A stretch of DNA of 64,000 nucleotides, from the IMG/VR virus record IMGVR_UViG_3300043446_005562, positions 124,001 through 188,000 of that record; one strand, 5' to 3'. A model generated the notes under the pieces. The model saw only the letters and a list, made by a program, of their open reading frames with translations, searched no databases and had not been told where the DNA came from. Position numbers and translations under genes: made by a program. This document shows positions 11,714 through 63,023 of this stretch, one piece after another (the stretch's first letter is position 1; each line of letters starts with the position of its first letter).

Positions 11714-12265
11714 ATGAGAATATTAGAATTTAAAGAATTCAAGCACTTACTATTGGAAGATGATCCTGCGGCACCACCGGCTGATGCTGCGGCTCCGCCG
11801 CCACCGCCTGCTGATGCAGCTGCCCCACCTCCACCGCCACCGCCGCCAATGGATCCAGGCGCGCCGCCTGCTCTACCAGCTGATCCAAATGCTGCACCTG
11901 CCGGCCCAGCCGCGCCAAGTGGCATGAAATTCATTTTTATCCAGGATGCTGAGAATAAAAAATGGCATGGTGCTCACGGAGAAGACGGAGGAACCAAAAG
12001 ATTTACTCAATACGAAGTAACCGCTGACGAATTAACAAAATGGTTAGAAGTTCATAAATTTGACAAGGAAAAGGATGTAGTTTTAGCGGCGCTTGCGGGT
12101 CGTCGACCAATGCCGCAAACTGTGTACACAACCTTCAAGAAAGAGGTTGTAGCTGGCGAATTGGGCACAGACAAGGGAATTTTGGACATTAAATTTGATT
12201 CCGAAGAAAACTTCAGCAATCCATCAACCTCTGATCTTGAAGTAGTTTTCTTAAAATCTAAATAA
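11714..12265 (+). CDS. Hypothetical late protein with Pro/Ala-rich linker; putative head-internal protein
   Basis: N-terminus MRILEFKEFKHLLLE (CTS-like), then a poly-Pro/ADAAAP tract and a globular C-terminus. Confidence 0.65.
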   Translation: MRILEFKEFKHLLLEDDPAAPPADAAAPPPPPADAAAPPPPPPPPMDPGAPPALPADPNAAPAGPAAPSGMKFIFIQDAENKKWHGAHGEDGGTKRFTQYEVTADELTKWLEVHKFDKEKDVVLAALAGRRPMPQTVYTTFKKEVVAGELGTDKGILDIKFDSEENFSNPSTSDLEVVFLKSK

Positions 12266-12999
12266 TGAGAAAATTTAAACGTTTCATATACGAATCAAAA
12301 TTCGATTCGTTCTCTAATATTATTGCAGATGAAATTCTTAGACTTGTAAAGGAGAGCTCTGCAAACAAGAGAACGATAACTCGTGATCTTAATTACGATG
12401 ATCCAGTTTCATTCTTTTTGACTCTGCATATTTCAAGATCCACAACATTTTCACCAGCAAAATCTAAAGCCTTTAAGCAGTTACCTTGGGAAACAATTAA
12501 TTTTGAGAGACGCGGCTTTGTGATTGATGCAAATTCTTATGTGCCAAGCGGCGATGAGGAACCGGAAGTTGAAATGTCAATAATCATTAGTCCAGAGGCT
12601 GAGCCAAATTGCTATCAAGCTCTCTATTTCAAAGTGCTAGACATTATTCGGCATGAAATGGAGCATCTACTTCAAAAGGGAGCCAATCAACAAGACGGCC
12701 ATATTGTTACAACTCGTCAAAAGACTAGATCAGCGGCCGAAGAGTCGTATCGATATTTTTTACTTGCTGACGAAATTCCATCAATGGTCTCAGGCATGCA
12801 CCTAGCTGCAGTTAAAAAGAGAATTCCAATTGATGTGGAATTTGAAGATTACCTATTTCCATTCATTGAATCTGGTTTTATAACAAGAGAAGAGGCGGAT
12901 AAAGTTATTAAAGTTTGGTTAGATTTTGCAGTGCAACATTTTCCGACCGTCAAAGTTAGTAATAATTTTAAATTTTTAAAACCGGGTGAGACTCGTTGA
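12265..12999 (+). CDS. Putative zincin-like metallopeptidase with CTS-like leader
   Basis: IIRHEMEHLLQ (HExxH) plus downstream DEIPS; N-terminus MRKFKRFIYES. Confidence 0.6.
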   Translation: MRKFKRFIYESKFDSFSNIIADEILRLVKESSANKRTITRDLNYDDPVSFFLTLHISRSTTFSPAKSKAFKQLPWETINFERRGFVIDANSYVPSGDEEPEVEMSIIISPEAEPNCYQALYFKVLDIIRHEMEHLLQKGANQQDGHIVTTRQKTRSAAEESYRYFLLADEIPSMVSGMHLAAVKKRIPIDVEFEDYLFPFIESGFITREEADKVIKVWLDFAVQHFPTVKVSNNFKFLKPGETR

Positions 13000-15807: not shown

Positions 15808-16133
15808 TGAGCGAAAATAAAGAATTTACACCGTTATTCGAACGCGTCCTAATCAAACCAGACAGCGTTGAAACAAAAACAGAGACAGGCATCATTTTAC
15901 CAGTTGAATCACGTAAGCGCCCAAATACCGGCGTCGTTATTTCAATCGGACACCTGGTAGCCGAAAATTCAAAATGTCCAGTAAAAGTAGGGGATAGGGT
16001 TCTCTATCAACGCTATTCCGGACTAGACGTAAAAGTAAATGGTGATTTGCATCACTTAGTTATGGCCAATGATCTTGTTGGCATTATAAATAATACTGCA
16101 AACAGCACAATTGAAATTGCGGACTATGCTTAA
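15807..16133 (+). CDS. groES: Co-chaperonin GroES
   Basis: PLFERVLIKP, KTETGIILP mobile loop, GVVISIG, VKVGDRVLY. Confidence 0.92.
   Translation: MSENKEFTPLFERVLIKPDSVETKTETGIILPVESRKRPNTGVVISIGHLVAENSKCPVKVGDRVLYQRYSGLDVKVNGDLHHLVMANDLVGIINNTANSTIEIADYA
16085..16093 (+). promoter_or_regulatory. Late promoter TATAAATAA inside the groES 3' end
   Basis: Exact T4 late consensus 32 nt upstream of the ATG at 16126. Confidence 0.6.
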
Positions 16134-16704
16134 AAACTTCTCACAATTTATTACTGAAAAACGCGGCGGCACCAAACAGATCTTTTGTGATCTAGACGGT
16201 GTGCTAGTTGATTTCAATCGGGGTTTTAAAAACCTTGAAGCAAACGAGGATAAGTTGACCCCGGAAGAATACAACAAGAAGCACGGAAAACACTCAATAT
16301 GGAAAATAATCGATCCTGAGGGAGAAAAATTCTGGATCAAACTTAAATGGACAAAGGACGGTCGCGAACTATGGGATTACTTAAGTCGCTATAATCCAAT
16401 TATTCTGTCTTCACCAAGCCGTAGTAAGCACTCAATTCCAGGTAAAATGGAATGGGTAAAGCGTAACTTGGGCATAAGTCAAGCAAAGCCAACAACTTCT
16501 GCATCAGATTGGGATCCAGCTAGCCGAATTATCCTAAGTTCAGATAAATTCAAGTTTGCCAGGTCAAAGGACGATATCTTGATTGATGACACTCGTGCTA
16601 AATTAGACAAATGGACTGCTGCTGGCGGAACTGGCGTGTTTCATAATGATGCAACCGATACAATTCGGGTTCTTGAAGAAATATTCACAAGTAAAAAAGA
16701 CTAG
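16126..16704 (+). CDS. HAD-superfamily 5'(3')-nucleotidase-like protein with CTS-like leader
   Basis: FCDLDGVLVDF (motif I), ILSSP, GKMEW, ILIDD (motif IV); N-terminus MLKNFSQFITEK. Confidence 0.8.
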   Translation: MLKNFSQFITEKRGGTKQIFCDLDGVLVDFNRGFKNLEANEDKLTPEEYNKKHGKHSIWKIIDPEGEKFWIKLKWTKDGRELWDYLSRYNPIILSSPSRSKHSIPGKMEWVKRNLGISQAKPTTSASDWDPASRIILSSDKFKFARSKDDILIDDTRAKLDKWTAAGGTGVFHNDATDTIRVLEEIFTSKKD

Positions 16705-16802: not shown

Positions 16803-19800
16803 TTAGAATGATGGAGTAAATCCAGTAGAGTTAGAAGCAAGTTGGCCACCAGCTCTTGTGATAGTGATGCGGTTGATAAATTTGTGAATTCCACGTGGGA
16901 AGTCAACAATAATATCAATGATACCTGCATTGTTCTCAAGAACTTCAACTCCATTATTTGAATCGTCAAATATTACCTCAGCGCTTGCAATACCTCTAGC
17001 ATCTTGAACTGACGCTAAGTAGTTCTTAACTAGGGTTTTAACTCGCATTCTGGTAGTAACATCATTGAAATCGAATAGGAAGTTTAACAAGATTCTTTCA
17101 ATATCTCTTTCAATTGTAACTAGAGCCTCTCTAACGTGGATGTTATTAAGTGCAGATTTTACTCTTTGATAACCTGTGTTATTTGAGAATACCATTACAC
17201 CAAAACCTCTACGTCTAACGATTAGGTTAAAACCGGCTGGCTCTAAGTAGTCACGATCTTCATTTGTTAAATCGTATTCCAATCCAGTAATTTCACCATC
17301 AGTCAAGATACCGCGTTTACCACCAACAATTGAGAAGGTATTACCGCTTGTGTATTTTTTCATGAAAGCATTTGCAACGTACATTGCTGGAGGAATTGAT
17401 TTATTCTTACCATTTTCGTAAATTACAACGTTTGGCATAAAATACGCAGAATAAGATGAGATAGGAATTCCGTTCTTATCGCCAGATGCAAATCCCATTG
17501 TGAAAGCTGGATTTGAACCAAGATCTCCGCCTGTTGAAATTGCTTCAGTTGAAACTAATCGAGTGGTCAAGTCAATAAAGCTTGGATCTACTGATTTTTC
17601 GTATTGTGCAAAAGAGGGTGCATTACAGATAGCCAAGGCTTTTCCGTGATTTGCCGCCAATTGAACAATTTGCTGTTTTGATTGAGATGAAATTTGACCT
17701 TCAAAAGAGTCAATAATGTATCTAAAATCAACAGTCTCATTGTCAGCTAAAGTCGATCCTAAATTACTACCTGTCATTACGTAATCTAGGATAACGTCCT
17801 GACGATCGGCTGTTCCATTAGGATAAAGGTCAACATCTGAAAGATTCATAGCTGGAACAAGGGCTCCTTTAAGATTCTTAACGAAATTCTTGATTCCTTT
17901 GATTGCTCTAATGCTAGAGTTATCAGTATCAAACCAGATTCCTAAATTGTTTTCATCAACTGAAGAGTCAGTTGTGATTGTGTATTTAAGAGTAGTCACC
18001 GTACTGCTAGATGGACCAAATCCAGTTTTTTGAATTTTTTGAGCATATACAGATTTAATTCTTAAAGCACGATTTCTTTCAATTGGATCACCGTTTCCGT
18101 CAACCTTGATTTTTGCTTTAAGGTATTGACCTGGCTTAAAGAAATCGTCAACTAGAGAACGTTTAGTTGCAGAATACGCATATCCAGCAGCAATGTTTGC
18201 AGTGTTAGATTCGCTCTTACTTGGGTTACCGTAAAGAGTTGGATCAACTTCAAAAACAATTTTGTTTGGTGCAAAATAGCTGTATGTAATGAACATGCCA
18301 GTATCAGCTAGGTCGAAATCATGTTTGAATGTTGAAGAGGTTGCATTGGCAATCCAAAGATAATCGCTACCACCGTCTGCTATTGATTCAACGTCTACCT
18401 GATTTGTTCTAGTGATATCTGAGTAAGCTGAGAATACTAAATATTTTACAGAGTTCTGAGTCTTGAATTCGCCATCCGTTCCAAGATACAGCGACTGCGT
18501 ATTGCTTGAAGCGTCTGTGTATTTCAAAAGATCTCCACTCTTGATAAAGCCATTCGAGTATGCATTGTAGAGCTTACTACCCTGAACCGCAATGATTGTG
18601 TCGGTGCCGGTTGTTTTAATGTAAGTTTCACCGCTTGCATAGGTTGCACTATATGTATCCAATGCAAAATAGAAAGTTGAATCGGCTGGCTTAGTATAAG
18701 AAAGAACATCAACTAGTGCAACTGGATTAACTCCAGTAATTCCATCGTCAACAATGTATTGAGTTTTTGAATTGTCAGTTGTGTTTAGTTCGTCAAAACC
18801 ATAACCAACTAGGTCAATTCTTTGTTCAGACATAGCCTCAATTGAAGAACCGCTATCAAATGTTGCATTTGTTAAGTCAATTAAATCAACTTTTTTAGAG
18901 TCAATTGCGCAATAGATTCCAGTTTGAGCAAAAAGGCGATTGAATACGTTATCTATTGAAACTACTGTGCCAGTTAAGTCTCTGAAATCTGGAATAATTG
19001 CACCTTGAGATTTAGCAATTAATTTGACCTCTTTTAGAGAAACGAAATCTCCAATCTTAGAATCAATGATTCCAGCTGCTGTAAAATACTGCTTGTAAAC
19101 AGGGTCGTTTGCTAATTTCAAATAATCTGTCCAATTTCCCTCAACTACAATTAGTTCAACAAAATAGTCAGCAACAATATCGTCAACATTTAAGTATTCA
19201 GGTATTTCAGCCTTATCGCTAAGTAGTCTATAATAATCCTTAACGCTAATGTCATATCCGTTAGTATCAGCTACTCTAACCCAAGCCGTAATATCCTTGC
19301 GAGATAAGTTAACTAGGGTAAAGATCTTGTTTGCGTCTTTGTCAGCTTCTCCATAGGTTCCTGGGCTAACAATATAGTCATCACCAAGATTAATATTTTT
19401 GTACTTACTAACCTGATTACCGTCTGCAAACCATAATTTTTGAGTGTTATAGAAATGCGACATTGAGTCAGAATTGGTGTTTGCTGACCAAGTTGAATTA
19501 TTTGAAGCAGATTCAGTATTAAAAGTTTTAAAATAAGCAATATCTGTATCGCTCACTGGTAAAACGTTCAACGCATAAACTGGTCCAAGTTTCAAACCAA
19601 CATCGATGGTACGATGAAAGTAACTACCATTTTTTTCTAACTTAGTATCAATGTCTCCATATACTGCGTTTAAGGTTCGAGTATCATTTACGAGTACCAC
19701 TGAGTTAATTGGGCCCTTTTTACTTGAACCAATAACTAGTCTGCCAGTTGAAATTGGAAGACTAAGGTTAGTGCTTTCATCAATTTCGATAGTGTATACA

Positions 19801-19841
19801 CCACTGGACTTGAACCTGTTCAGATTTAATTTTTCTGCCAT
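16803..19841 (-). CDS. gp18: Contractile tail sheath protein (gp18-like, 1012 aa with large insertions)
   Basis: N-terminal SSGVYTIEIDES...GSSKKGPIN; C-terminal IPPAMYVA, RDYLEPAGFN, SALNNIHVRE, FDFNDVTTR, FDDSNN. Confidence 0.9.
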   Translation of the reverse strand: MAEKLNLNRFKSSGVYTIEIDESTNLSLPISTGRLVIGSSKKGPINSVVLVNDTRTLNAVYGDIDTKLEKNGSYFHRTIDVGLKLGPVYALNVLPVSDTDIAYFKTFNTESASNNSTWSANTNSDSMSHFYNTQKLWFADGNQVSKYKNINLGDDYIVSPGTYGEADKDANKIFTLVNLSRKDITAWVRVADTNGYDISVKDYYRLLSDKAEIPEYLNVDDIVADYFVELIVVEGNWTDYLKLANDPVYKQYFTAAGIIDSKIGDFVSLKEVKLIAKSQGAIIPDFRDLTGTVVSIDNVFNRLFAQTGIYCAIDSKKVDLIDLTNATFDSGSSIEAMSEQRIDLVGYGFDELNTTDNSKTQYIVDDGITGVNPVALVDVLSYTKPADSTFYFALDTYSATYASGETYIKTTGTDTIIAVQGSKLYNAYSNGFIKSGDLLKYTDASSNTQSLYLGTDGEFKTQNSVKYLVFSAYSDITRTNQVDVESIADGGSDYLWIANATSSTFKHDFDLADTGMFITYSYFAPNKIVFEVDPTLYGNPSKSESNTANIAAGYAYSATKRSLVDDFFKPGQYLKAKIKVDGNGDPIERNRALRIKSVYAQKIQKTGFGPSSSTVTTLKYTITTDSSVDENNLGIWFDTDNSSIRAIKGIKNFVKNLKGALVPAMNLSDVDLYPNGTADRQDVILDYVMTGSNLGSTLADNETVDFRYIIDSFEGQISSQSKQQIVQLAANHGKALAICNAPSFAQYEKSVDPSFIDLTTRLVSTEAISTGGDLGSNPAFTMGFASGDKNGIPISSYSAYFMPNVVIYENGKNKSIPPAMYVANAFMKKYTSGNTFSIVGGKRGILTDGEITGLEYDLTNEDRDYLEPAGFNLIVRRRGFGVMVFSNNTGYQRVKSALNNIHVREALVTIERDIERILLNFLFDFNDVTTRMRVKTLVKNYLASVQDARGIASAEVIFDDSNNGVEVLENNAGIIDIIVDFPRGIHKFINRITITRAGGQLASNSTGFTPSF

Positions 19842-28869: not shown

Positions 28870-30540
28870 ATGAAGATAACTCAATTCTCCTTTAAGAACA
28901 TTTGTTCATACGGCAATAAATTACAAACTTTTAAATTCTCAGACGATCCTCAGCTTGTTCTAGTTCAGGGTAAAAACGGCAGTGGAAAATCTTCTATCTC
29001 TGATGCCCTAACTGTCGCGCTATACGGAAAATCTTCAATCCGAAAAACCAAAGAGATTCCAAATCGAATCAATAAAAATGCCTATACTCATGTTGAATTT
29101 TTGACAGGTTCAGGTGAGGTTATTGAAATTGAAAGAGGTCTTGAGCCGAATTTTTCCAAGCTCTTGATTAATGGATCCGAGCACAATCTTCCCGATAAAA
29201 GAAGAGTCGATGATTTTATTGAAGAAGAATTGACAAAGATTCCATTCAATGTATTTTCAAATACAATTAGCCTGTCGGTAAATGATTTTAAGAGTTTTGT
29301 AAAATTAAGCCCCCATGACAAGCGCCAGATTATTGATAAAATATTTGGACTAGATATCGTAAATGACATGTCCAGAATAAGTAAAGAAGAGGTTCGAGAA
29401 TTAAAGATCTCAATTCAGTCCCTTGACTCAACTATTTTAAATAATGAGGCCATTTTGGAAAATTCCAAAGACCAGCTAAATAACCTAAAGCAGGATCTGT
29501 CTTCAGCTAAAGAGACTAGAATTTCCGAACTTACTCAAGAGATTTCTGAGCTAAGTAGGGTCAAAGAGTCTCATAAAGCCGAGTATACTGGATTCTCATC
29601 TCAACTTCAAGACTTAGAAAAAGCGGTTAATGAAGCAAAGGAGACGCGTACCACAATTCAATTCAATATCTCAGAGATTCAAAAGAAATTAGATCTCTAT
29701 TCCAAGAACAAGTGTCCACACTGTCTATCTGATTTGACCGATGCGGCTCACTTGAATATCAAAGAGAAACTTTCAAATAAAAAAGAGGAGCAAGCCAGCT
29801 TATTACCTGAGACTGCCGTAAAGATTCAGGATGCAATCCATATTTTGGATAAGGCAAAGGCCGCACAGAGCGCAGCTAGAGACAAATATTTTCAAATAGA
29901 CGGGCTCTTAGCTCCACTAAAAAAGGAATTATCTGACCTGTCAACAACGGACGTTACCACCCAACAGTCGGGAACAGAATACATAAACGGGGTAATTGAA
30001 TCAATAGAGAATGAAATTTCAGACCTAAATTCAAAGCGTGCAAAATTAATGAGTCAGCTCTCAATTTCACAAGAAATGGAAGATATTTTATCTGACAACG
30101 GTATGAAACGTTTGTTAATGAGCCAAATCATTCCAATGTTGAATAAAAAGATCTTAAAGACTTCAAAGCTATTGGAATTCAAATTCGCATTCGAATTTGA
30201 TCTTGAATTCAATCCAATCATTACTCATTTGGGCATGCAGATTTCACCAGATTCACTTTCAGCCGGAGAGCAGAAAAAAATGAATTTGATTGTTTTGCTC
30301 TGTATTCTAGAGCTTTTAAAATTAAAACATCACAAGGTCAATTTATTGTTTCTGGATGAAGTATTTTCATCACTAGACGTTGAATCCATCTATAGAGTGG
30401 TGGATTTATTGAAAACTTTTGCTAAAAAGTACAATATGACGGTCTTTGTAATTTCACACGATCCTCTACCTGAAGAGTTTTTCGATACAAAATTGATGGT
30501 TGAGAACACTGATCACTTCTCCGACATTAAGATTCTGTAA
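28870..30540 (+). CDS. gp46: Recombination ATPase subunit (gp46/Rad50/SbcC)
   Basis: GKNGSGKS, coiled coil with CPHC zinc hook, LSAGE signature, LFLDE, VISH. Confidence 0.94.
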   Translation: MKITQFSFKNICSYGNKLQTFKFSDDPQLVLVQGKNGSGKSSISDALTVALYGKSSIRKTKEIPNRINKNAYTHVEFLTGSGEVIEIERGLEPNFSKLLINGSEHNLPDKRRVDDFIEEELTKIPFNVFSNTISLSVNDFKSFVKLSPHDKRQIIDKIFGLDIVNDMSRISKEEVRELKISIQSLDSTILNNEAILENSKDQLNNLKQDLSSAKETRISELTQEISELSRVKESHKAEYTGFSSQLQDLEKAVNEAKETRTTIQFNISEIQKKLDLYSKNKCPHCLSDLTDAAHLNIKEKLSNKKEEQASLLPETAVKIQDAIHILDKAKAAQSAARDKYFQIDGLLAPLKKELSDLSTTDVTTQQSGTEYINGVIESIENEISDLNSKRAKLMSQLSISQEMEDILSDNGMKRLLMSQIIPMLNKKILKTSKLLEFKFAFEFDLEFNPIITHLGMQISPDSLSAGEQKKMNLIVLLCILELLKLKHHKVNLLFLDEVFSSLDVESIYRVVDLLKTFAKKYNMTVFVISHDPLPEEFFDTKLMVENTDHFSDIKIL

Positions 30541-32330: not shown

Positions 32331-32975
32331 TTAAACTTCCTCGTTTTGCTCTTCGTCTTCTAATGGCTTTTTACTTTCGTCAGCCATTTTTTCAGAGTCT
32401 TCTTCCTCTTCTTCGGTCTTGCACATCTTTTCGATTGCTGCGCATAATAGATCGCAAACTTCTTCTTTTTCAAGTTCCATCTTTTCGCAAATATTATCAA
32501 TCATTTCTTGAAGATCATCTCCGAATTCTTCAGTTAATTGTTCAAGTAATTCCTCGTCTACTTCGTATCCGAGTTCAACATTTTCGTCATTTTCTAGAGG
32601 TTCTTCAGCTTCATTAAATTCATAGCCGTAGTTTTCATTTACGAATTCTTCGTATCTAGCAATTTTGCCTTCTTCGACTGCTTCTACTGTTGCAATGGTT
32701 GGTTTAGCGTACATTTGTGTATAAGGTTTTTTCTTTGCTGTTCTGTAAACGATATCGCTTGAAAAACCTTTCCAAGCAGAATCATAATTTGGATTGAAAC
32801 GCCCGCCTTCAGCATTGGGGTCGCGCTCAACAATTCTTTGATATCCATCAAGAGATTTTCTCTTTGATTTATCAAAATCTTCTTTTTCAGAAGGACCACC
32901 AAACGCAGGCTTCTTTAAATTAGTCCATCTGTCTAGTGAAGGATTATCTCTGCGTTTTATGTTAAACATGTCCAT
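32331..32975 (-). CDS. Hypothetical late protein (basic N-half, acidic C-half), putative head-internal
   Basis: Follows the tail tube gene; internal KIARYEEFVNE motif. Confidence 0.6.
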   Translation of the reverse strand: MDMFNIKRRDNPSLDRWTNLKKPAFGGPSEKEDFDKSKRKSLDGYQRIVERDPNAEGGRFNPNYDSAWKGFSSDIVYRTAKKKPYTQMYAKPTIATVEAVEEGKIARYEEFVNENYGYEFNEAEEPLENDENVELGYEVDEELLEQLTEEFGDDLQEMIDNICEKMELEKEEVCDLLCAAIEKMCKTEEEEEDSEKMADESKKPLEDEEQNEEV

Positions 32976-34538: not shown

Positions 34539-35042
34539 TTATCCGATTTCTTTATCACCACGAAATTCTTTTCCGCGGTTTGATTTTTTCTTGTCTGGGT
34601 CAACTGGTTTGTAATTAGCCCAAATTTCATTGTAAATACGGCAAGATGCGCCCATGAAATTAACAATGCCGACGTATTTCTTACGATCGTCACCTTTCAT
34701 TTTTGAAATTCTTTTGCCAATTGTGCGAGCATCATCCAAATCCAATTCTTCATCATCCGACTTTCCAACTAAATCCTTTAGTGAATTTGTTTCAGTCACG
34801 TAAGATTCAAAGGTTGGATGCACATGAGGGCCATGTGGACCCATTGGATCCAAGTCAGTATCTTCTGATTCAAGATCAGCAGATCCGCCCATTCTTTCTA
34901 TTTGAGCAAGGCCTTCTTCCTGAGAGTTTACTGGAATTAAAGTATTTCGACCAACGACATAGTAGCCGTCTTCTCTTTCTTCAATTCTAAGTGGACCCGA
35001 CAGATCGAATTCCATGCCATCACTAAACTTAAGTTTTGACAT
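34539..35042 (-). CDS. Hypothetical late protein with internal CTS-like motif
   Basis: HPTFESYVTET separates two small domains. Confidence 0.6.
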   Translation of the reverse strand: MSKLKFSDGMEFDLSGPLRIEEREDGYYVVGRNTLIPVNSQEEGLAQIERMGGSADLESEDTDLDPMGPHGPHVHPTFESYVTETNSLKDLVGKSDDEELDLDDARTIGKRISKMKGDDRKKYVGIVNFMGASCRIYNEIWANYKPVDPDKKKSNRGKEFRGDKEIG

Positions 35043-35053
35043 GTTAATTTGAT

Positions 35054-35413
35054 TTATTTAGGCATCTTTGCCATAGAAGGATCAACCTTCTTGTTAAGGG
35101 CTTTTCCTTTGATAACTAATTTAGAAATCTTTGGATCAACTTCTTTTTTAGAAGCAGTTCCGCGACCCTTTGGCAAATCAGCAATACCGGTTTTTACCAT
35201 TTTCTTAGGCTCAGAACCACGACCCTTTGGCAAATCTGCCATTTCAGGTTTAACAGTTTTGCTGATAGACTTGCCCTTTCCAGCAGGAAGGTCAGAAGTT
35301 TCATCATCAACTTGTTTGGTGATCTTTTTACCTTTAGCAGGAGCACCCTTAGAAAGATCTTGATTCATTTTCTTTTCGAAAAGATACTCTTCGTAGCTTA
35401 AAACTGATTTCAT
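35054..35413 (-). CDS. Lys-rich repeat protein with CTS-like leader; putative DNA-condensing internal protein
   Basis: MKSVLSYEEYLFEKK, then 19-aa repeats around DLP(K/A)G(R/K)G; late box at 35459-35467. Confidence 0.7.
   Translation of the reverse strand: MKSVLSYEEYLFEKKMNQDLSKGAPAKGKKITKQVDDETSDLPAGKGKSISKTVKPEMADLPKGRGSEPKKMVKTGIADLPKGRGTASKKEVDPKISKLVIKGKALNKKVDPSMAKMPK
35164..35300 (-). repeat. 57-bp period coding repeat (DLPKGRG units)
   Basis: GACCCTTTGGCAAATC at 35164 and 35221, with a diverged third copy near 35275. Confidence 0.75.
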
Positions 35414-35537: not shown

Positions 35538-37250
35538 TTAATATGCAGTTGAAGGAGCTACAGAACCTGTCAATACTCCTAGTCCTGTTACAGACATTGT
35601 GATGTATTGAGTTTCTGGGTGCCATCCTGCTTCTGTAATAGCATAACGAGATTTCATACCTAATTTTGGAGAGAAAGTACCCTCTGCGATAGTTTGAAGA
35701 CTCTCAGCCATGATATATGGAAGGAATTTAACACCTGGTTCTTCATCAGCACCTTTACGACCGATGTGGATACGGTTATCAGTGAACTTCAAGTTAGGAT
35801 CAACGTATACAGTTAGACCGTGTACTTTACCAGCTGGGTAAAGTTGGCCAGGACCTGAAGGAAGATCGTTATTGAATGGAGCGAAAGAATAACCAGCAAC
35901 ATCAGCAAGAGCTGAAGCTACACGACCGTTAGTAACGATGTATGTACCAGCACCGAAACGACCTCTGTGATAAATCAAGTTAGCCATTTCAAGGATTTTA
36001 GTAACAACACGACGTTGTAGAGTTGAGATGTTTTCGAAACCAGAACCTACAGTAAGATCTAAAGTAGTGATTCCTGAACCTTCAACTGAGTTAACGCTAG
36101 TTGCGTGAGTAGCACCTAAGTTCAATACTCTGTCAACTAATTTTTTGTTGATACCTTGTGCAAGTTCGTTAACCGCAACGTTTTCCAACATAGAGATTAC
36201 GTCGAAATTCCAAACACGGTTAAGATCTTGGATTTGCTCAACAGTTGCAGAGATTGCTACTTGGTCACCTTTTGCTTCGATGAACTTAGTGAACATACGA
36301 AGACCCATTTGACGGAATTTAGAAACTTCAGCAACTTCACGTTTCATACCGTCGAAGTTAACTTGCGAACCGTTTGAACCTAAGAAAGGACCATCGAATG
36401 CAGTTGAAGCATAGTCAGAATCGCTTACTGAAGTGAAACCTGAAATGTGATTTTCTAGAGCAGATACTAAAGTAGCTGTCATACCGTTAGCACCACCGAA
36501 ACCTTTCCAAGGTTCAGCTGAAGTACCAGCAGCAGAGTTACCTGTATCGGTACGTGAACCTGTGTAAGTAACGTTATCAAGAGCAGCAACTGCGTCAGCT
36601 ACAGTAGTAGTAGATGAATCAGTAGTACCACCTTGGATTACTTTTAGGATAGGTAAACCGTCGATACGAGATTTTCCAACGTATTGGAATTTGAAAGCAG
36701 CGCCAGTGTTACCAGTATCACCTTGGATATAGTCACCAATTGTAATACCTGCATTAAGAGCAGAAGACAATTTAACCATATAAGGTTCGTACTGAGTATC
36801 TAAGTTACCACCTTGGTATACGTAGTCCAAGTAAGGTAAGAAACCTACTGGAGAATCCATAGGAACTACACCAACTAGGTCGAAACCGATAGTTTTAGCA
36901 GCTACTTGGATAGCTACTGGAAGAAGGCTTGGGAATTTATCACCAGAACCAGATACAGAAGCACCGTAACCATTTTTTACACCAGCTGTGAATGGTGTCA
37001 TTGAGCTAGTTGGAGCAGAGATTGCACCAATTGAGCTGATAGAACCAGGTTGTTGTAAGAACAAACCAGGAGCTGAACCTGAAGCCAAAGCTTCGTTCAA
37101 TGAGCCTGCGTTATCGAAGATAGCGTGGTTGTGAGCGTAGTCAACTAACCAAGGGCGAGCTTTGATGTCTGCACCGTAACCTTCTAATACTGGAGCCCAA
37201 GTTTCAGTAACTGAAGCGTCATTCAGTCTTTTGAAAATTTTTGTTGCCAT
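35538..37250 (-). CDS. gp23: Major capsid protein (gp23-like)
   Basis: TWAPVLEG, IGFDLVGVVPM, TVEQIQDL, ELAQGINK, GRFGAGTYIV, FLPYI, TFSPKLGMKSRYA; SLNEA probable maturation site; strongly biased codons; TATAAATAA late box at 37389-37397. Confidence 0.93.
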   Translation of the reverse strand: MATKIFKRLNDASVTETWAPVLEGYGADIKARPWLVDYAHNHAIFDNAGSLNEALASGSAPGLFLQQPGSISSIGAISAPTSSMTPFTAGVKNGYGASVSGSGDKFPSLLPVAIQVAAKTIGFDLVGVVPMDSPVGFLPYLDYVYQGGNLDTQYEPYMVKLSSALNAGITIGDYIQGDTGNTGAAFKFQYVGKSRIDGLPILKVIQGGTTDSSTTTVADAVAALDNVTYTGSRTDTGNSAAGTSAEPWKGFGGANGMTATLVSALENHISGFTSVSDSDYASTAFDGPFLGSNGSQVNFDGMKREVAEVSKFRQMGLRMFTKFIEAKGDQVAISATVEQIQDLNRVWNFDVISMLENVAVNELAQGINKKLVDRVLNLGATHATSVNSVEGSGITTLDLTVGSGFENISTLQRRVVTKILEMANLIYHRGRFGAGTYIVTNGRVASALADVAGYSFAPFNNDLPSGPGQLYPAGKVHGLTVYVDPNLKFTDNRIHIGRKGADEEPGVKFLPYIMAESLQTIAEGTFSPKLGMKSRYAITEAGWHPETQYITMSVTGLGVLTGSVAPSTAY

Positions 37251-37267: not shown

Positions 37268-38545
37268 TTAATTTTGTGCTCTTCTTTTGAGAGCGTCTAA
37301 ATAGTTACTTGAGTAACCTCTTAGACTTTCGTGTACTTGTGTTAACGAAACATAGCCCTCTTTACCTTGGCTTTCGTTAATTGTTTGATTATTTATATTG
37401 TTTGCTTGCGCAATTCTTTCGCTGATTGCTCTAAGATCACGTGAATCCCAGAAAGCTTTTGCTTGGTAAGGAGTGTTGATCACTTGAGTAGAGGCCTGTG
37501 CCGCAATCCAGTTACGCTCATTATCTGTCATACCTTCAAACACTGATTTGTATTTTTCTGGCATGAAACGAACGTAGGCTGGGGTGTTTTCTACCTGTTT
37601 GTTCAATACTGCTTCCATGATATTGATAACTTCACCTTCAGTAAAGAAGATAGCGCCTTTCATCGTTTCAACGATTGCAGATTTAGTTTCAGTATCTAAA
37701 GCATAGAATTTTTGTTTATTAGATTCGCTAAGAAGTTTTAGGAATGGATACTTGTTCTCAAGAACAGCATTTGCTGAATTTGATTTAATGTGAGCAAGAA
37801 TTCCGTCAACTGCATTAGTTAATTCATCAACACCAGAGGCATCATTAACTTCGTAGCTTGCATTTTCATTAAGTTTCTTAACGTCAGCTAATAGTCTACG
37901 AGCTTTGATGTTGGTATTTGGAGTGATCTTTTCGTTCATTGTTTCAGCAATGTACTCAGAATAGGCAATACCTTTTTGTAAGTTTTCGCCTAAATACTCA
38001 GAATATTTAATAGCTGCATCAAGATTTTCAGCTAAGTAATTTGCAAATTTGATACCCTTTTCAGCATTTTCTGCAACGTATTCAGCGTATTGAATACCCT
38101 TGTCAACGTTTTGAGCTAGATAGTTTGAATAGGCAATATTCTTTTCAACGTTTTCAGCAATGTATTCGCCGTAATTGATGGATTGATTTACCTTTTCGCC
38201 TAAGTAGTCAGAGTATTGAATATTCTTCTCAATTTTTTCTGCTAAGTAATCGCCGTAATCGATCACGTTGTTTACCTTTTCAGCAACGTGTTCAGTATAA
38301 CCAATACCCTTATTCAACATGGTTGAAAGGTAATTAGAATACTCCACCATTTTTTCCATTTCACCAGCTAGGTAATTTACATACTCAACTAGTTTTCCAG
38401 TTTCTGGTGATTCGTTACTATTTTCGTTAAGAGCACGTAGACCAGCGTTATTTTTCGAAAGGTTTTCTTGAAGAGCGTCGAATTTCTTCTTTACCAATTG
38501 CGAATACTGGTTCATTTCTTCTCTTGATACAAAGTCATTAGCCAT
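37268..38545 (-). CDS. Nested in-frame scaffold/core protein (425 aa, starts MANDFVSREE)
   Basis: Internal late box AATAAATAA at 38583-38591 and an A-rich leader (AAACAACAAAATAACAATAAGCAA) precede the in-frame ATG (codon 236). Confidence 0.6.
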   Translation of the reverse strand: MANDFVSREEMNQYSQLVKKKFDALQENLSKNNAGLRALNENSNESPETGKLVEYVNYLAGEMEKMVEYSNYLSTMLNKGIGYTEHVAEKVNNVIDYGDYLAEKIEKNIQYSDYLGEKVNQSINYGEYIAENVEKNIAYSNYLAQNVDKGIQYAEYVAENAEKGIKFANYLAENLDAAIKYSEYLGENLQKGIAYSEYIAETMNEKITPNTNIKARRLLADVKKLNENASYEVNDASGVDELTNAVDGILAHIKSNSANAVLENKYPFLKLLSESNKQKFYALDTETKSAIVETMKGAIFFTEGEVINIMEAVLNKQVENTPAYVRFMPEKYKSVFEGMTDNERNWIAAQASTQVINTPYQAKAFWDSRDLRAISERIAQANNINNQTINESQGKEGYVSLTQVHESLRGYSSNYLDALKRRAQN

Positions 38546-39250
38546 TTGCTTATTGTTATTTTGTTGTTTAGGAATTTCAGAATTATTTATTCTATAGATC
38601 TTCACAGAATCTTCAAAAGAGAAGCTTTCTGATATATCTGTTAATTTATTTGTGATTGAAGCAGTCTTTAAAGTATCCAAAGACTCAAACAGAACTGAGA
38701 AATTGTCCTTAAGGCTTTCAGATACCTGAGTTAGGGATGCTTGCGAGAAACCAGGTTCAGCAACAATATCGTAGGTAAAGATTTTTTGAATCTTAACAAC
38801 ACCGCTCTCATTTACATTACCTGCAGCTCTTGATGAGGTTGAGATAGTACAGCCTGACTCAACTAGGGTCTTTGCAATACGACCGCATGGAGTATCAAGT
38901 ACTCTTAATTTGATACGAACAGTATTTGAAGGCTCGTCATAGTTAAGAGATTCAACCACGTGAGATACGTTCTTTAAGGAAACGTCAAAGCTTTGTGGAT
39001 GATCAAGCTCTCCAAATAACTGACCCTTTTTGATTTTTTCGTTTAGATAGGAAAGATGAGGCAAGTACTCTTGCTTCTCATAGATACGATTGTTTTCGTT
39101 CTTTTGTCCAAAGACTGCGCAAATACCTTCAAGGATAATTGAACCGTCATTTGATTTTGAAACATTTAATGCTTCATTAACTCGTTCAATGATGAATAAT
39201 TGACTTTCATCAAAGCCGGTCTTTAGTAAGTTTGTTTTAGCGCTAGTCAA
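37268..39250 (-). CDS. gp21: Prohead protease (gp21-like) fused to core/scaffold domain
   Basis: LEGICA, NENNRIY, GELDHP, NVSH, LDTPCG, STSSRAAG, TYDIVAEPGF; long helical repeat C-terminus; TTG start; late boxes at 39269-39277 and 39316-39324. Confidence 0.88.
   Translation of the reverse strand: MTSAKTNLLKTGFDESQLFIIERVNEALNVSKSNDGSIILEGICAVFGQKNENNRIYEKQEYLPHLSYLNEKIKKGQLFGELDHPQSFDVSLKNVSHVVESLNYDEPSNTVRIKLRVLDTPCGRIAKTLVESGCTISTSSRAAGNVNESGVVKIQKIFTYDIVAEPGFSQASLTQVSESLKDNFSVLFESLDTLKTASITNKLTDISESFSFEDSVKIYRINNSEIPKQQNNNKQMANDFVSREEMNQYSQLVKKKFDALQENLSKNNAGLRALNENSNESPETGKLVEYVNYLAGEMEKMVEYSNYLSTMLNKGIGYTEHVAEKVNNVIDYGDYLAEKIEKNIQYSDYLGEKVNQSINYGEYIAENVEKNIAYSNYLAQNVDKGIQYAEYVAENAEKGIKFANYLAENLDAAIKYSEYLGENLQKGIAYSEYIAETMNEKITPNTNIKARRLLADVKKLNENASYEVNDASGVDELTNAVDGILAHIKSNSANAVLENKYPFLKLLSESNKQKFYALDTETKSAIVETMKGAIFFTEGEVINIMEAVLNKQVENTPAYVRFMPEKYKSVFEGMTDNERNWIAAQASTQVINTPYQAKAFWDSRDLRAISERIAQANNINNQTINESQGKEGYVSLTQVHESLRGYSSNYLDALKRRAQN
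37934..38395 (-). repeat. Eleven tandem 14-aa repeats in the scaffold domain (K.I.Y..Y[LIV]AE...)
   Basis: KLVEYVNYLAGEME / KMVEYSNYLSTMLN / ... / KGIAYSEYIAETMN; 42-bp periodicity. Confidence 0.85.
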
Positions 39251-39315: not shown

Positions 39316-40194
39316 TTATTTATCAAAGTCTTTTAGCAATTCTCTAAGAGTTGAGAGGTTTTGTTCTGATTGATTGGTGAGATCAGGTTTATTTACCTTG
39401 ACTTCAAAAATAAAAGCTCCACGATGGCCAAGCGGTGAGACTAGACCCTGGTCGGGAATGCGCACTCTAATATCTGATAGATTAGTAACATTAAGCGATT
39501 TTATGCGATATTTTTTACCCAGAGGATTCTCCAGGATGATTTCTTCAGCAAAAAGAACATCATGTAGGCTTAAATTAACAGTCTGTATAAGATCAATTTC
39601 CCTGATTTCAAGACCGACTTTGTCAATTATTACCCTAATTATTAGGTCTCCAACCGCACTTGCCTGTCGAGCCCGGCCAAAAAAGTCAGATCTTTCAAAT
39701 ATTTGACTTGAGCCAGCTCCCCTAATCCTGAGCGTAATTACTTCGTTTGAGCCAACTTGGGTAATCGGATAGGCTGTCTTACTTAGGTCAAGCCGAATAC
39801 GATAAGTTTTATTCTCAAAGCTCGACCGGTCCAATCCAATCTTGGATATTTGATAGTCCACAACAAATTCAACGCCAGCCATTAGTTCAGTAAGAGAGAA
39901 CTTTCTATCCCTAATCACATGCAAATGGGTAGGAGTCTCAAAACTACCAAATGAAAAGTCATGAAAAGAGGTAAAATGGTCCTGAAACTGAGGGCCCATT
40001 TGTGCACGATCGTATTCAGCGCGCTTGGCCGGATCACTAAGCGTGTTATAGGCATCCGCTATCTGTTTGAAGAGTTCCTCGCCATCCGGATTTTTATCAG
40101 GGTGGTATATCTTAGTTAATTTTCGATATGCCTTTTTTATCTCGTCAGGAGTTGCCTCTTGCGAAATCTCAAGAATTTCATAATAATTTTTCAA
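39316..40194 (-). CDS. dnaJ: DnaJ-family co-chaperone
   Basis: [23 protein letters not shown]-domain; C-terminal GDLIIRV and GAFIFEV; no zinc finger. Confidence 0.9.
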
Positions 40195-55031: not shown

Positions 55032-55637
55032 TTAAGCCGTTGCAAGATTCGATAAACCGGCCTTAGTCAATTGCTCCTTCCAAATTATTGGAAAATTCTT
55101 GTTCCACTCAGCAACTCGACCTTTTCTATCCAGCTTGTCGCTGTCATTTAAAACGGAATACATGTTCTTAAGAGCCGTAACTTCAAGATTGGTATCGCCG
55201 GCTGCTTGCATAGCGTTCATTTGTTCAAGCGAGTAGGCTTTTTTCCAACCCAGTTTTGCGTGAAGTTCTAATGCATCTTCCACCGAATCTAAAATCATTC
55301 TGCCGAACATTTTTTTACCTGGATTATTTGGATCATTGCTCACAACCGGCTGAGCCGCTTGACTAGGCATAATCTTTTTAAGAGCCGCTTGCATTGAGGC
55401 CTGATCTTTACTAGCGCCGGTGTCGGTAACGGATCCCTCAGTTGCGTCCCAATAGGCATACATGCTGTGTGCTTTATCATCAGCGAATGGATACTTATAG
55501 GCAACTCCATTTGATTTTAGAGTGTAACCCTCAGGTTTTGCGCCCGGACCAGAAGTGCCGGCTGTTGCTGCTGGATTTGTTGGTGCGGCCGCTGCTTCCT
55601 CGTTCAACCACTGTGTATAACCTTTAATAATTTTCAT
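55032..55637 (-). CDS. Hypothetical late protein with CTS-like leader
   Basis: MKIIKGYTQWLNEE followed by an Ala/Pro linker; late box at 55661-55669. Confidence 0.65.
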   Translation of the reverse strand: MKIIKGYTQWLNEEAAAAPTNPAATAGTSGPGAKPEGYTLKSNGVAYKYPFADDKAHSMYAYWDATEGSVTDTGASKDQASMQAALKKIMPSQAAQPVVSNDPNNPGKKMFGRMILDSVEDALELHAKLGWKKAYSLEQMNAMQAAGDTNLEVTALKNMYSVLNDSDKLDRKGRVAEWNKNFPIIWKEQLTKAGLSNLATA

Positions 55638-62435: not shown

Positions 62436-63023
62436 TTAGTCTAGTGAACCGAAATCGCCTCTGCTCATAGCTGCGGCAAATTCTCTATCGGCTTTTGAAT
62501 CTTTAGCGATATTAAGCCCGATAACGCGCTCGGCAATTTCCGGATTTTGTTTTAAAAATTTAATTAGGGCTCCTGTATCAATGTCCTGGTATTCTCCAGA
62601 TCCACCAAATTCAACAAGCTCTTTTTCTAACCTAAACATTGGCGATCTATTAGTCAGCTCAAGGTGCCAAATGCTAAACGTTATGATTTGACCGTTGCGC
62701 TCCATGTGATCGGCCATATCTGTCAAATCTTTGACTACGTCAGCTAACGCGTATTCCTTGTCCATTGCCCTGTCCCATTCGTTCCATTGCTTTCCATCAA
62801 CCTTTATGTTGATTGGAGTAGATGCGTTGGAGAATCCGGGCACCAATACAGTTTCCAGATTTGGGCACAGTTCAAATATTTCAGCCAGATCCACTGCAAA
62901 ATCCTCAATAGTTTCGCCCCTTAGACCGTGATCAGGTAGAAGACCCTTTGCTTTTAACCAGGCTCTGCGCTGTCTGTGAGCTGATTCGGCTATAAATTCG
63001 GTGAATCCTTTAAGATTTTTCAT
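62436..63023 (-). CDS. Hypothetical late protein with near-perfect T4-type capsid targeting sequence
   Basis: MKNLKGFTEFIAES compared with T4 MKTYQEFIAE; late box at 63040-63048. Confidence 0.7.
   Translation of the reverse strand: MKNLKGFTEFIAESAHRQRRAWLKAKGLLPDHGLRGETIEDFAVDLAEIFELCPNLETVLVPGFSNASTPINIKVDGKQWNEWDRAMDKEYALADVVKDLTDMADHMERNGQIITFSIWHLELTNRSPMFRLEKELVEFGGSGEYQDIDTGALIKFLKQNPEIAERVIGLNIAKDSKADREFAAAMSRGDFGSLD

What the first reader, a model, noticed from the sequence alone, without database searches (positions are those of the whole stretch)
37934..38395. The scaffold's eleven 14-aa repeats are themselves tandem copies of the cargo-targeting motif
Seen in sequence: the scaffold repeats contain YGEYIAE, YSEYIAE, YAEYVAE, YGDYLAE, YSEYLGE and FANYLAE. 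This is the same [YF]-x-x-[YF]-[ILV]-x-E consensus as the cargo leaders and the T4 CTS (YQEFIAE). Inference: cargo leaders may mimic one scaffold repeat and co-assemble into the helical prohead core. Each repeat would also supply a gp21-type (I/L)xE cut site for core destruction. This would give a concrete mechanism for capsid targeting.
Basis: partly seen in the sequence, partly recalled or inferred. Interest (0 to 1): 0.75.

Follow-up and report, generated by a model that had tools for sequence, protein, structure and literature searches.

The report
Scaffold repeats resembling capsid-targeting leaders
A jumbo phage's head-scaffold protein, fused to its T4-type maturation protease, contains eleven 14-residue helical repeats that share an aromatic-pair-plus-cut-site layout with short leaders on at least 16 of its other proteins, which suggests but does not prove how cargo is recruited into the capsid.

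Summary
Window 37934-38395 (minus strand) encodes residues 286-439 of a 660-aa protein. Its N-terminal part is a T4 gp21-type prohead protease and the rest is a scaffold. The stretch is eleven 14-residue units in perfect register. Seven fit [YF]xx[YF][ILV]xE and eight carry an in-register [ILV]xE.

The array is old. There is no DNA-level repeat, and the units are kept one-for-one in hundreds of metagenomic relatives, including 635-735 kb huge phages.

The cargo leaders are also real. Sixteen genes of this 253-kb genome, five of them in the window, start with M-K-x-x-K-x-F-x-x-F-[ILV]-x-E; about 1.7 are expected by chance. Two repeat-bearing huge phages have 23-26 such genes. Lak-A1 and PAU, which lack the array, have none above chance.

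In T4, published mutagenesis assigns the two aromatics of the capsid targeting sequence to targeting and I/E to cleavage. The shared layout is therefore meaningful.

Leaders are not copies of a repeat. A repeat profile does not detect them. They differ consistently (F vs Y, N vs A, K vs I), and always at the heptad a/d positions. They do not co-vary with the repeats between lineages. T4 has leaders but no such array.

Co-assembly of leaders with the repeats remains an untested inference.

The parts
37268..39250 (-). 660-aa protease-scaffold fusion gene (TTG start)
   Evidence: ORF. Homologues of 640-677 aa have the same architecture. Pfam Peptidase_S77 35.2 bits against a cut-off of 27, and phrog_207 head maturation protease at 3.9e-38.
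38651..39196 (-). gp21-type prohead protease domain (about aa 19-200)
   Evidence: The AF2 model matches T4 gp21 (5JBL) at E 1e-8, TM 0.70-0.72 by target. The ELDHP and SSR motifs align with T4 gp21 ELNHP and SSR and are invariant in 47-52 relatives.
38396..38650 (-). linker and first scaffold helix (aa 201-285)
   Evidence: AF2 predicts disorder at 198-242 and a helix at 243-276, at low confidence.
37934..38395 (-). eleven 14-aa repeats (aa 286-439), consensus K-G-I-x-Y-[SGA]-[EDN]-Y-[LIV]-[AG]-E-N-[VL]-[DE]
   Evidence: Folded alone, the best model predicts one continuous helix (residues 5-165 of 168, pLDDT 69); the other four models score 34-42.
37268..37933 (-). conserved helical C-terminal domain of the scaffold part (aa 440-660)
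   Evidence: pLDDT is 57-84 for aa 490-620. The domain is present in 118 of 149 family representatives. Its function was not tested.
35538..37250 (-). major capsid protein, gp23 family, directly downstream
   Evidence: Pfam Gp23 at 1.5e-40.
35375..35413 (-). leader MKSVLSYEEYLFE of a 119-aa ORFan next to the capsid gene
12265..12294 (+). leader MRKFKRFIYE of a 244-aa ORFan
16126..16158 (+). leader MLKNFSQFITE of a 192-aa ORFan
55599..55637 (-). leader MKIIKGYTQWLNE of a 201-aa ORFan
62985..63023 (-). leader MKNLKGFTEFIAE of a 195-aa ORFan

Best explanation
Residues 286-439 are the helical rod of the scaffold half of a gp21-type protease-scaffold fusion. Each 14-residue unit is two heptads and carries two things. 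The first is an a/d stripe (Ile P9, small P6, Ala/Gly P2, Val/Leu P2') that would build the rod or coiled coil. The second is a patch on another face, Tyr(P7)-x-x-Tyr(P4)-aliphatic(P3), followed by x-Glu(P1). That patch has the two-part layout of the T4 capsid targeting sequence: an aromatic pair for affinity to the core, then aliphatic-x-Glu for cutting by the prohead protease. The N-terminal leaders on at least 16 otherwise unrelated proteins carry only this second part and lack the a/d stripe. Inferred mechanism: leaders form short one-faced amphipathic helices. These pack against or among the periodic Tyr patches of the scaffold rods, the same contacts the rods probably use laterally, so cargo is built into the core. 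The fused protease then cuts after Glu in leaders and in most repeats. This releases the cargo and reduces the scaffold to peptides of about 14-39 residues that can leave the shell. Shown here: the domain identity, the repeat anatomy, the leader family, the shared and differing positions, and the clade-wide conservation. Inferred: helix packing, leader-repeat contact, and cleavage after Glu in this phage. My separate estimates are about 0.8 that this is a scaffold rod studded with protease sites, and about 0.35 that leaders dock directly on the repeats.
For: The gene sits directly upstream of the gp23-type capsid gene. The repeats show weak homology to the annotated scaffold of Serratia phage BF (E 2e-4). 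They are predicted all-helical. Family-wide unit statistics over 149 representatives: P9 I 64%; P7 Y/H/F 70/17/13%; P4 Y 86%; P3 L/I/V 97%; P2 A 64%; P1 E 84%; P2' L/V/I 78%. The 11 units are conserved position by position down to 53% identity, and near-perfect DKNIAYSEYIAENL arrays occur in 635-735 kb phages. Leader enrichment is and Glu enrichment at P1, without requiring it. Leaders and repeats are both hydrophobic at P7, P4 and P3. Only repeats are hydrophobic or small at P9, P6, P2 and P2'. T4 mutagenesis maps targeting to CTS residues 4 and 7 and processing to 8 and 10, and the internal proteins co-purify with gp22 (PMC9026906). Predicted [LIV]xE cuts leave no scaffold fragment longer than 39 aa. 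The cargo set is diverse, mostly ORFans plus one CHAP-domain protein, like the T4 internal proteins.
Against: There is no binding or cleavage data. The AF2 models are low in confidence over the repeats (pLDDT 30-45 in the full protein), and only one of five models of the repeat segment alone reaches 69. A repeat HMM and PSSM do not recognise leaders. Tyr in repeats versus Phe in leaders is a stable difference across lineages, and no co-variation is seen. T4 has the leader, and its gp22 has no aromatic motif and no detectable homology to this region. The co-occurrence of array and leader expansion rests on one clade, so on roughly one or two independent events.
Confidence: 0.5

Rival explanations
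1. The shared motif reflects only a shared protease. Repeats and leaders are both substrates of the gp21-type enzyme, and the aromatic positions belong to an extended recognition site or to a helix that presents the site. Leaders reach the core through some other partner.
For: P3 aliphatic and P1 Glu are the best-shared positions. The T4 gp23 maturation site FGSFLTE also fits the aromatic motif. Glu at P1 is 84% conserved across the repeat family.
Against: The gp21 site is described as short, L/I-x-E. In the T4 CTS the aromatics affect targeting rather than processing, and Asp at position 10 blocks cutting but not targeting (PMC9026906). The likely capsid-protein cut site in this window (GSLNE) has no aromatics. 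Many T4 cut sites lack them.
Confidence: 0.2
2. Leaders and repeats bind a common third partner, such as the inner face or N-terminal arm of the capsid protein or the portal. The scaffold binds it multivalently and cargo binds it once, so there is mimicry without leader-repeat contact.
For: The layout is shared while residue preferences differ. In phages with a separate scaffold gene, the scaffold itself begins with a leader-like peptide: PAU gp152 MKTLTQLYE, BF MSKLDKFLNE, T4 gp22 MLKEQLIAE. The LR756500 capsid protein starts MIKLINE.
Against: No partner has been identified. T4 internal proteins co-purify with gp22. T4 cores assemble with internal proteins before the shell is added, according to the reviews read.
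Confidence: 0.15
3. Coincidence. The array is an ordinary heptad-based scaffold repeat with Tyr, and its resemblance to the leaders is a post-hoc match to a four-position degenerate motif.
For: Profiles of the whole unit do not detect leaders. Differences at P9, P4 and P2 are consistent. Upstream spacing differs: the aliphatic residue is at P10 in leaders and at P9 in repeats.
Against: The chance that a random 14-residue unit fits the motif is about 0.005 (rates). The match falls in the one protein where core affinity is expected. Aromatic pairs are unusual in coiled-coil scaffolds, and Tyr P4 is 86% conserved family-wide. Array and leader expansion co-occur.
Confidence: 0.15

Closest known systems
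T4 capsid targeting sequence (MKTYQEFIAE of IPII and IPIII; Mullaney and Black 1996, as summarised in PMC9026906)
   Same: The leaders here have the same length, N-terminal position and layout: Lys near the start, aromatic-x-x-aromatic, aliphatic-x-Glu. They sit on unrelated small proteins. The repeats contain the same seven-residue core.
   Different: This genome has 16 leader genes against two confirmed in T4 plus one look-alike (gp61.1). The repeats are internal and tandem, use Tyr-Tyr rather than Tyr-Phe, and carry an extra a/d hydrophobic stripe. Targeting has not been tested here.
T4 gp22 scaffolding core protein with gp21 protease
   Same: A helical protein encoded between protease and capsid gene, with many aliphatic-x-Glu sites, presumably destroyed by the protease. 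The protease domain has the gp21 fold.
   Different: Here it is fused to the protease in one chain. It shows no detectable sequence homology to gp22 (hhalign probability 0.5%). gp22 has 16 L/I-x-E sites but no aromatic motif and no 14-residue array.
Protease-scaffold fusions of huge phages LR756500-LR756504 and LR745206 (genomes of Al-Shayeb et al. 2020, unannotated records)
   Same: True homologues at 32-38% identity, with the same three-part architecture, 10-13 well-formed 14-residue units, and many MK..KKFNDFLNE-type leaders.
   Different: Their units are more uniform. LR756500 has His in place of many Tyr. The records carry no annotation, and I found no paper describing the repeats.
Propeptides of phiKZ and SPN3US head proteins cut by a gp21-like protease
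   Same: N-terminal propeptides are thought to target inner-head proteins and are removed after Glu (PMC5694885).
   Different: Those propeptides are mostly over 100 residues, with an A/S-x-E site. No short shared leader and no scaffold counterpart has been defined there.

Membership tests
T4 gp21-type prohead protease (Pfam Peptidase_S77) | Profile match above the curated cut-off | tested here: met
   35.2 bits against a cut-off of 27, aa 37-149. phrog_207 at 3.9e-38.
T4 gp21-type prohead protease (Pfam Peptidase_S77) | gp21 fold | tested here: met
   Foldseek match to 5JBL at E 1e-8, TM 0.70-0.72 by target.
T4 gp21-type prohead protease (Pfam Peptidase_S77) | Conserved His and Ser motifs (T4 ELNHP and SSR; assigning them to catalysis is my recollection of the gp21 structure paper) | tested here: met
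   ELDHP (H84) and SSR (S139-S140) are invariant in 47-52 homologues and line up with the T4 sequence.
T4 gp21-type prohead protease (Pfam Peptidase_S77) | Cleaves after Glu in L/I-x-E | not testable with these tools
   Indirect evidence only: Glu is enriched at P1 of leaders and is 84% at P1 of repeats.
gp22-type scaffolding core protein | Encoded between protease and major capsid gene | tested here: met
   Fused to the protease, with the capsid gene starting 18 nt downstream.
gp22-type scaffolding core protein | Sequence homology to T4 gp22 | tested here: not met
   hhalign probability 0.5%. There is weak similarity to the annotated scaffold of Serratia phage BF, E 2e-4.
gp22-type scaffolding core protein | Helical, with many protease sites | tested here: met
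   All-helical AF2 predictions. There are 21 [LIV]xE sites after aa 230 and the largest fragment is 39 aa.
T4-type capsid targeting sequence (leaders) | About 10-13 N-terminal residues with aromatic, x, x, aromatic, aliphatic, x, Glu on unrelated proteins | tested here: met
   16 genes against 1.7 expected. The proteins are unrelated ORFans.
T4-type capsid targeting sequence (leaders) | Sufficient to target a protein into the prohead and removed by the protease | not testable with these tools
   Needs packaging assays and mass spectrometry.
T4-type capsid targeting sequence (the scaffold repeats as copies of it) | N-terminal position | tested here: not met
   The repeats are internal, aa 286-439.
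T4-type capsid targeting sequence (the scaffold repeats as copies of it) | Core seven-residue motif | tested here: met
   7 of 11 units match strictly. The family-wide consensus is Y-x-x-Y-[LIV]-A-E.
T4-type capsid targeting sequence (the scaffold repeats as copies of it) | Profile-level similarity between repeats and leaders | tested here: not met
   The repeat HMM scores leaders at -0.9 to -1.2 bits, within noise. The best leader ranks 34th with the PSSM. Residue preferences differ significantly at P9, P4 and P2.

The most novel reading that the evidence does not exclude
The periodic Tyr-x-x-Tyr-aliphatic patches on the scaffold rod are the physical receptor for capsid-targeting leaders. They would form a multivalent docking array in which each unit holds one leader helix until the fused protease cuts both. 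That would name the so-far unidentified binding partner of T4-type capsid targeting sequences. It would also explain how huge phages load dozens of different proteins into the head.
Probability: 0.3. Interest if true: 0.8.

Novelty: new variant of a known kind. Interest (0 to 1): 0.6.

Why it matters
[quoted passage not shown] In this clade both sides of the problem are written plainly in the sequence. One side is a scaffold made of about 11 near-identical units. The other is 16-28 cargo genes per genome with a uniform leader. That gives a simple, repetitive system for peptide-binding, structural and mutational tests of targeting. It would also give a means of predicting the packaged, probably injected, protein set of uncultured huge phages from sequence alone. 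The leader could be tried as a packaging tag, as the T4 CTS already is.

Tried and rejected
Negative or rejected lines:
- Tandem Repeats Finder on the DNA found nothing, because the repeat exists only at protein level.
- A PSSM from the 11 units and an HMM from 374 units, scanned over the proteome, did not rank leaders above noise. I therefore rejected the claim that leaders are copies of a repeat.
- hhalign of the family against T4 gp22 showed no homology.
- A PDB sequence search with aa 240-475 gave nothing below E 0.5.
- AF2 of the full protein gave pLDDT 30-45 over the repeats. For the repeat segment alone one model shows a single long helix at pLDDT 69 and the other four score 34-42. No oligomeric or hairpin model can be trusted.
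- Molecular ruler idea: counts by eye suggested more units in larger genomes. An objective HMM count gave 10-13 well-formed units regardless of genome size (253-735 kb), so this is not supported.
- Co-variation of leader and repeat consensus across three genomes: none seen.
- Stand-alone scaffold-like representatives showed no MK-type leader at their N-termini.
- Pfam on 19 leader-bearing or neighbouring proteins gave one CHAP domain and otherwise nothing above cut-off.

Procedural and literature points:
- Literature searches found no description of these repeats or of the leader family in huge phages. The searched library is incomplete.

Full report
WHAT IS THERE. The window is bases 124001-188000 of a 252,618-bp IMG/VR phage record, 41% G+C, rated 93% complete. 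ORF 37268-39250 on the minus strand encodes 660 aa. Residues 37-149 match Pfam Peptidase_S77 above its cut-off, and phrog_207 (head maturation protease) matches at 3.9e-38. An AlphaFold2 model of the whole protein matches the T4 gp21 structure 5JBL at E 1e-8, TM 0.70-0.72 by target. The ELDHP and SSR motifs line up with ELNHP and SSR of T4 gp21 and are invariant in relatives. The gp23-family major capsid gene follows directly at 35538-37250. The protein is therefore a gp21-type prohead protease fused to what occupies the place of the scaffold.

THE REPEATS. The finding's coordinates translate to residues 286-439. These are eleven 14-residue units with no indel. Seven fit [YF]xx[YF][ILV]xE. A profile built from 374 homologous units finds exactly these 11 units (12-19 bits), and nothing else in the proteome scores above 4.4 bits. 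There is no DNA-level tandem repeat. Units are 57% identical in DNA, 38% at third codon positions and 40% in protein. The array is therefore old and held in place by selection on the protein.

The protein has more than 3,500 relatives in metagenomes. The 120 closest (53-95% identity over the scaffold part searched, aa 230-660) are almost all 640-677 aa with the same protease domain; a few are shorter, apparently truncated entries. In the relatives inspected, down to 53% identity, the 11 units keep their register and their individual quirks. For example, unit 3 is always YTEHVAE. An exhaustive profile search finds 603 cluster representatives. Of the best 149, 109 have the protease domain and 118 the C-terminal domain. 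Their units give P9 I 64%, P7 Y/H/F 70/17/13%, P4 Y 86%, P3 L/I/V 97%, P2 A 64%, P1 E 84%, P2' L/V/I 78%.

The nearest database phages are the huge phages LR756500-LR756504 and LR745206 (462-735 kb), at 32-38% identity. Four of them carry near-perfect arrays of DKNIAYSEYIAENL. LR756500 carries a His-rich variant.

Folded alone, the repeat segment is predicted in the best of five models as one continuous helix at pLDDT 69; the other four models score 34-42. In the full-length model it is helical but of low confidence. The region has no detectable homology to T4 gp22 or to any solved structure. It has weak similarity to the annotated scaffolding protein of Serratia phage BF, E 2e-4.

THE LEADERS. 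A scan of my own ORF calls for the whole genome finds 16 genes that begin with a T4-like leader, for example MKHLKQFSQFISE, MKTFSQFINE and MKNLKGFTEFIAE. Five lie in the window, with the leader-coding bases starting at 12265(+), 16126(+), 35413(-), 55637(-) and 63023(-). From the internal rate of the motif 1.7 are expected, P 4e-11. When Glu is not required by the search, 15 of 25 N-terminal matches to the aromatic-x-x-aromatic-aliphatic-x core still have Glu next, against 15% internally. The proteins are unrelated ORFans; one has a CHAP domain.

I then fetched whole genomes of relatives and controls. LR756500 has 23 such genes against 3.1 expected, with consensus MKYIKEYEEFLNE. LR756504 has 26 against 5.2, with consensus MKxIKKFNDFLNE. 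T4 has 4 against 1.0; these include ipII and ipIII (MKTYQEFIAE) and gp61.1.

Prevotella phage Lak-A1 has a related protease fusion (about 47% identity over the protease domain) that carries an acidic low-complexity linker instead of the repeats. It shows no enrichment (2 against 2.2). Sphingomonas phage PAU (1 against 1.4) uses a different leader, MKT[LI]xQL[YF]E. Serratia phage BF shows no enrichment by pattern tallies. Sinorhizobium phage Phosso has a handful.

HOW ALIKE ARE LEADERS AND REPEATS? The two sets were aligned on the motif, using 68 leaders and 37 repeats from three genomes. Both are hydrophobic at P7, P4 and P3 and have Glu at P1. P6 is mostly small or polar and P5 acidic or polar in both. 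They differ sharply elsewhere:
- P4: F in leaders, Y in repeats (53:8 against 2:29, P 2e-14).
- P2: N against A (P 4e-16).
- P9: K against I (P 7e-15).
- P2': polar against V/L.
- Leaders are aliphatic at P10, repeats at P9.

Read as heptads with P9 = a, all repeat-only hydrophobic or small positions (P9, P6, P2, P2') are a/d positions. The shared ones (P7, P4, P3) are c, f and g. My inference is that the repeat is a two-faced helix: an a/d stripe that makes the rod, plus a Tyr-Tyr-aliphatic patch every 14 residues, which is about 2.1 nm. The leader is a one-faced helix that carries only the patch-type face.

This agrees with published T4 genetics. In MKTYQEFIAE, residues 4 and 7 (the aromatics) matter for targeting and residues 8 and 10 for processing. 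Asp at position 10 blocks cutting but not targeting. The internal proteins co-purify with gp22 (PMC9026906).

Leaders are not copies of a repeat. Neither a PSSM nor an HMM of the unit ranks them above noise. The F/Y, N/A and K/I differences are stable over lineages that share only about a third of their residues. There is no co-variation: LR756500 leaders have Y at P7 while its repeats drift to His, and the other two genomes keep F in leaders and Y in repeats. T4 keeps the leader, yet gp22 has 16 L/I-x-E sites and no aromatic motif. A tandem array is therefore not a general requirement for CTS function. 'Each repeat gives a cut site' holds for 8 of 11 units. Even so, predicted [LIV]xE cuts would leave no scaffold fragment longer than 39 aa. 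The co-occurrence of array and leader expansion is phylogenetically close to a single event. No tool here could model a complex or test binding.

VERDICT. Repeats and leaders share the two-part 'core-affinity plus release' code of the T4 CTS, and they share it in the protein where that is most meaningful. They remain distinct sequence classes. The most likely reading, at about 0.5 overall, is a scaffold rod studded with periodic Tyr patches and protease sites, with cargo leaders using the same kind of contact. Direct leader-repeat docking is about 0.35 likely. Rivals are a shared protease site only, a common third partner, and coincidence.

I found no published description of the repeats or of this leader family in huge phages, within the limits of the searched library. 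The question it bears on is described as open in a recent review (PMC9958956).

Noticed in passing
window 39316-40194 (-): A DnaJ-like gene sits directly upstream of the protease-scaffold gene. It has a J domain (2.4e-24) and a weak DnaJ C-terminal domain below cut-off. It could be a phage co-chaperone placed next to the head module.
   Followed up: partly
G000:C1:15656-19387 (outside the window); LR756500 313382-317720: Leader-bearing genes come in runs. Five consecutive genes carry the leader in this genome, and a paralogous run in LR756500 starts MKYILEYEEFLLE. This resembles the variable internal-protein loci of T-even phages.
   Followed up: partly
window 34791-34811 (-) and 32634-32654 (-): Two ORFans beside the capsid gene contain internal copies of the motif: FESYVTE at aa 78-84 of the 167-aa ORF and YEEFVNE at aa 108-114 of the 214-aa ORF. 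These may be cut sites ending long propeptides.
   Followed up: no
window 59476-62430 (-): A 984-aa protein with a weak RNA-ligase-like N-terminus (phrog_548, 6.4e-07) contains two internal motif copies (YLDFIAE, FGEFVGE). It lies next to the leader gene at 62436-63023.
   Followed up: no
window 37218-37250 (-); L001:21914-21934: The capsid protein here starts MATKIFKRLND, and its LR756500 homologue starts MIKLINE. This is a leader-like N-terminus, with Asp here where the relative has Glu.
   Followed up: no
L134:67-231 (T4 18966-19130, gene 61.1): The 54-aa T4 hypothetical protein gp61.1 begins MKTFKEFIKE, a close look-alike of the ipII/ipIII capsid targeting sequence.
   Followed up: no
L015:2728-5744 (Sphingomonas phage PAU gp149-gp154): Four head-module proteins start MKT[LI]xQL[YF]E (gp149, gp150, gp152, gp153) and a fifth, gp154, starts MKTISKLYE. 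They include the annotated scaffold (gp152) and the 'internal capsid protein' (gp154). This is a different leader dialect, and it is carried by the scaffold itself.
   Followed up: partly
L014:3447-5201 (Prevotella phage Lak-A1): The Lak protease fusion keeps the protease and the C-terminal domain. In place of the Tyr repeats it has about 200 residues of Asp/Glu/Ser-rich low-complexity sequence. The genome has no enrichment of aromatic leaders.
   Followed up: partly
P0160, P0175 (family representatives without a protease domain): Some apparently stand-alone scaffolds begin with D-F-N-K-Y-[ST]-E-Y-L-K, a motif-like element at residues 10-18. It corresponds to NQYSQLVKKKF just after the protease domain in the window protein.
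   Followed up: no
window 16803-19841 (-), 9215-11626 (+), 28870-30540 (+): Context genes: tail sheath (1.6e-82), ribonucleotide reductase large subunit (5.8e-206) and an SbcC-like nuclease subunit (1.5e-80). The portal-like gene lies outside the window at G000 196381-198072.
   Followed up: partly
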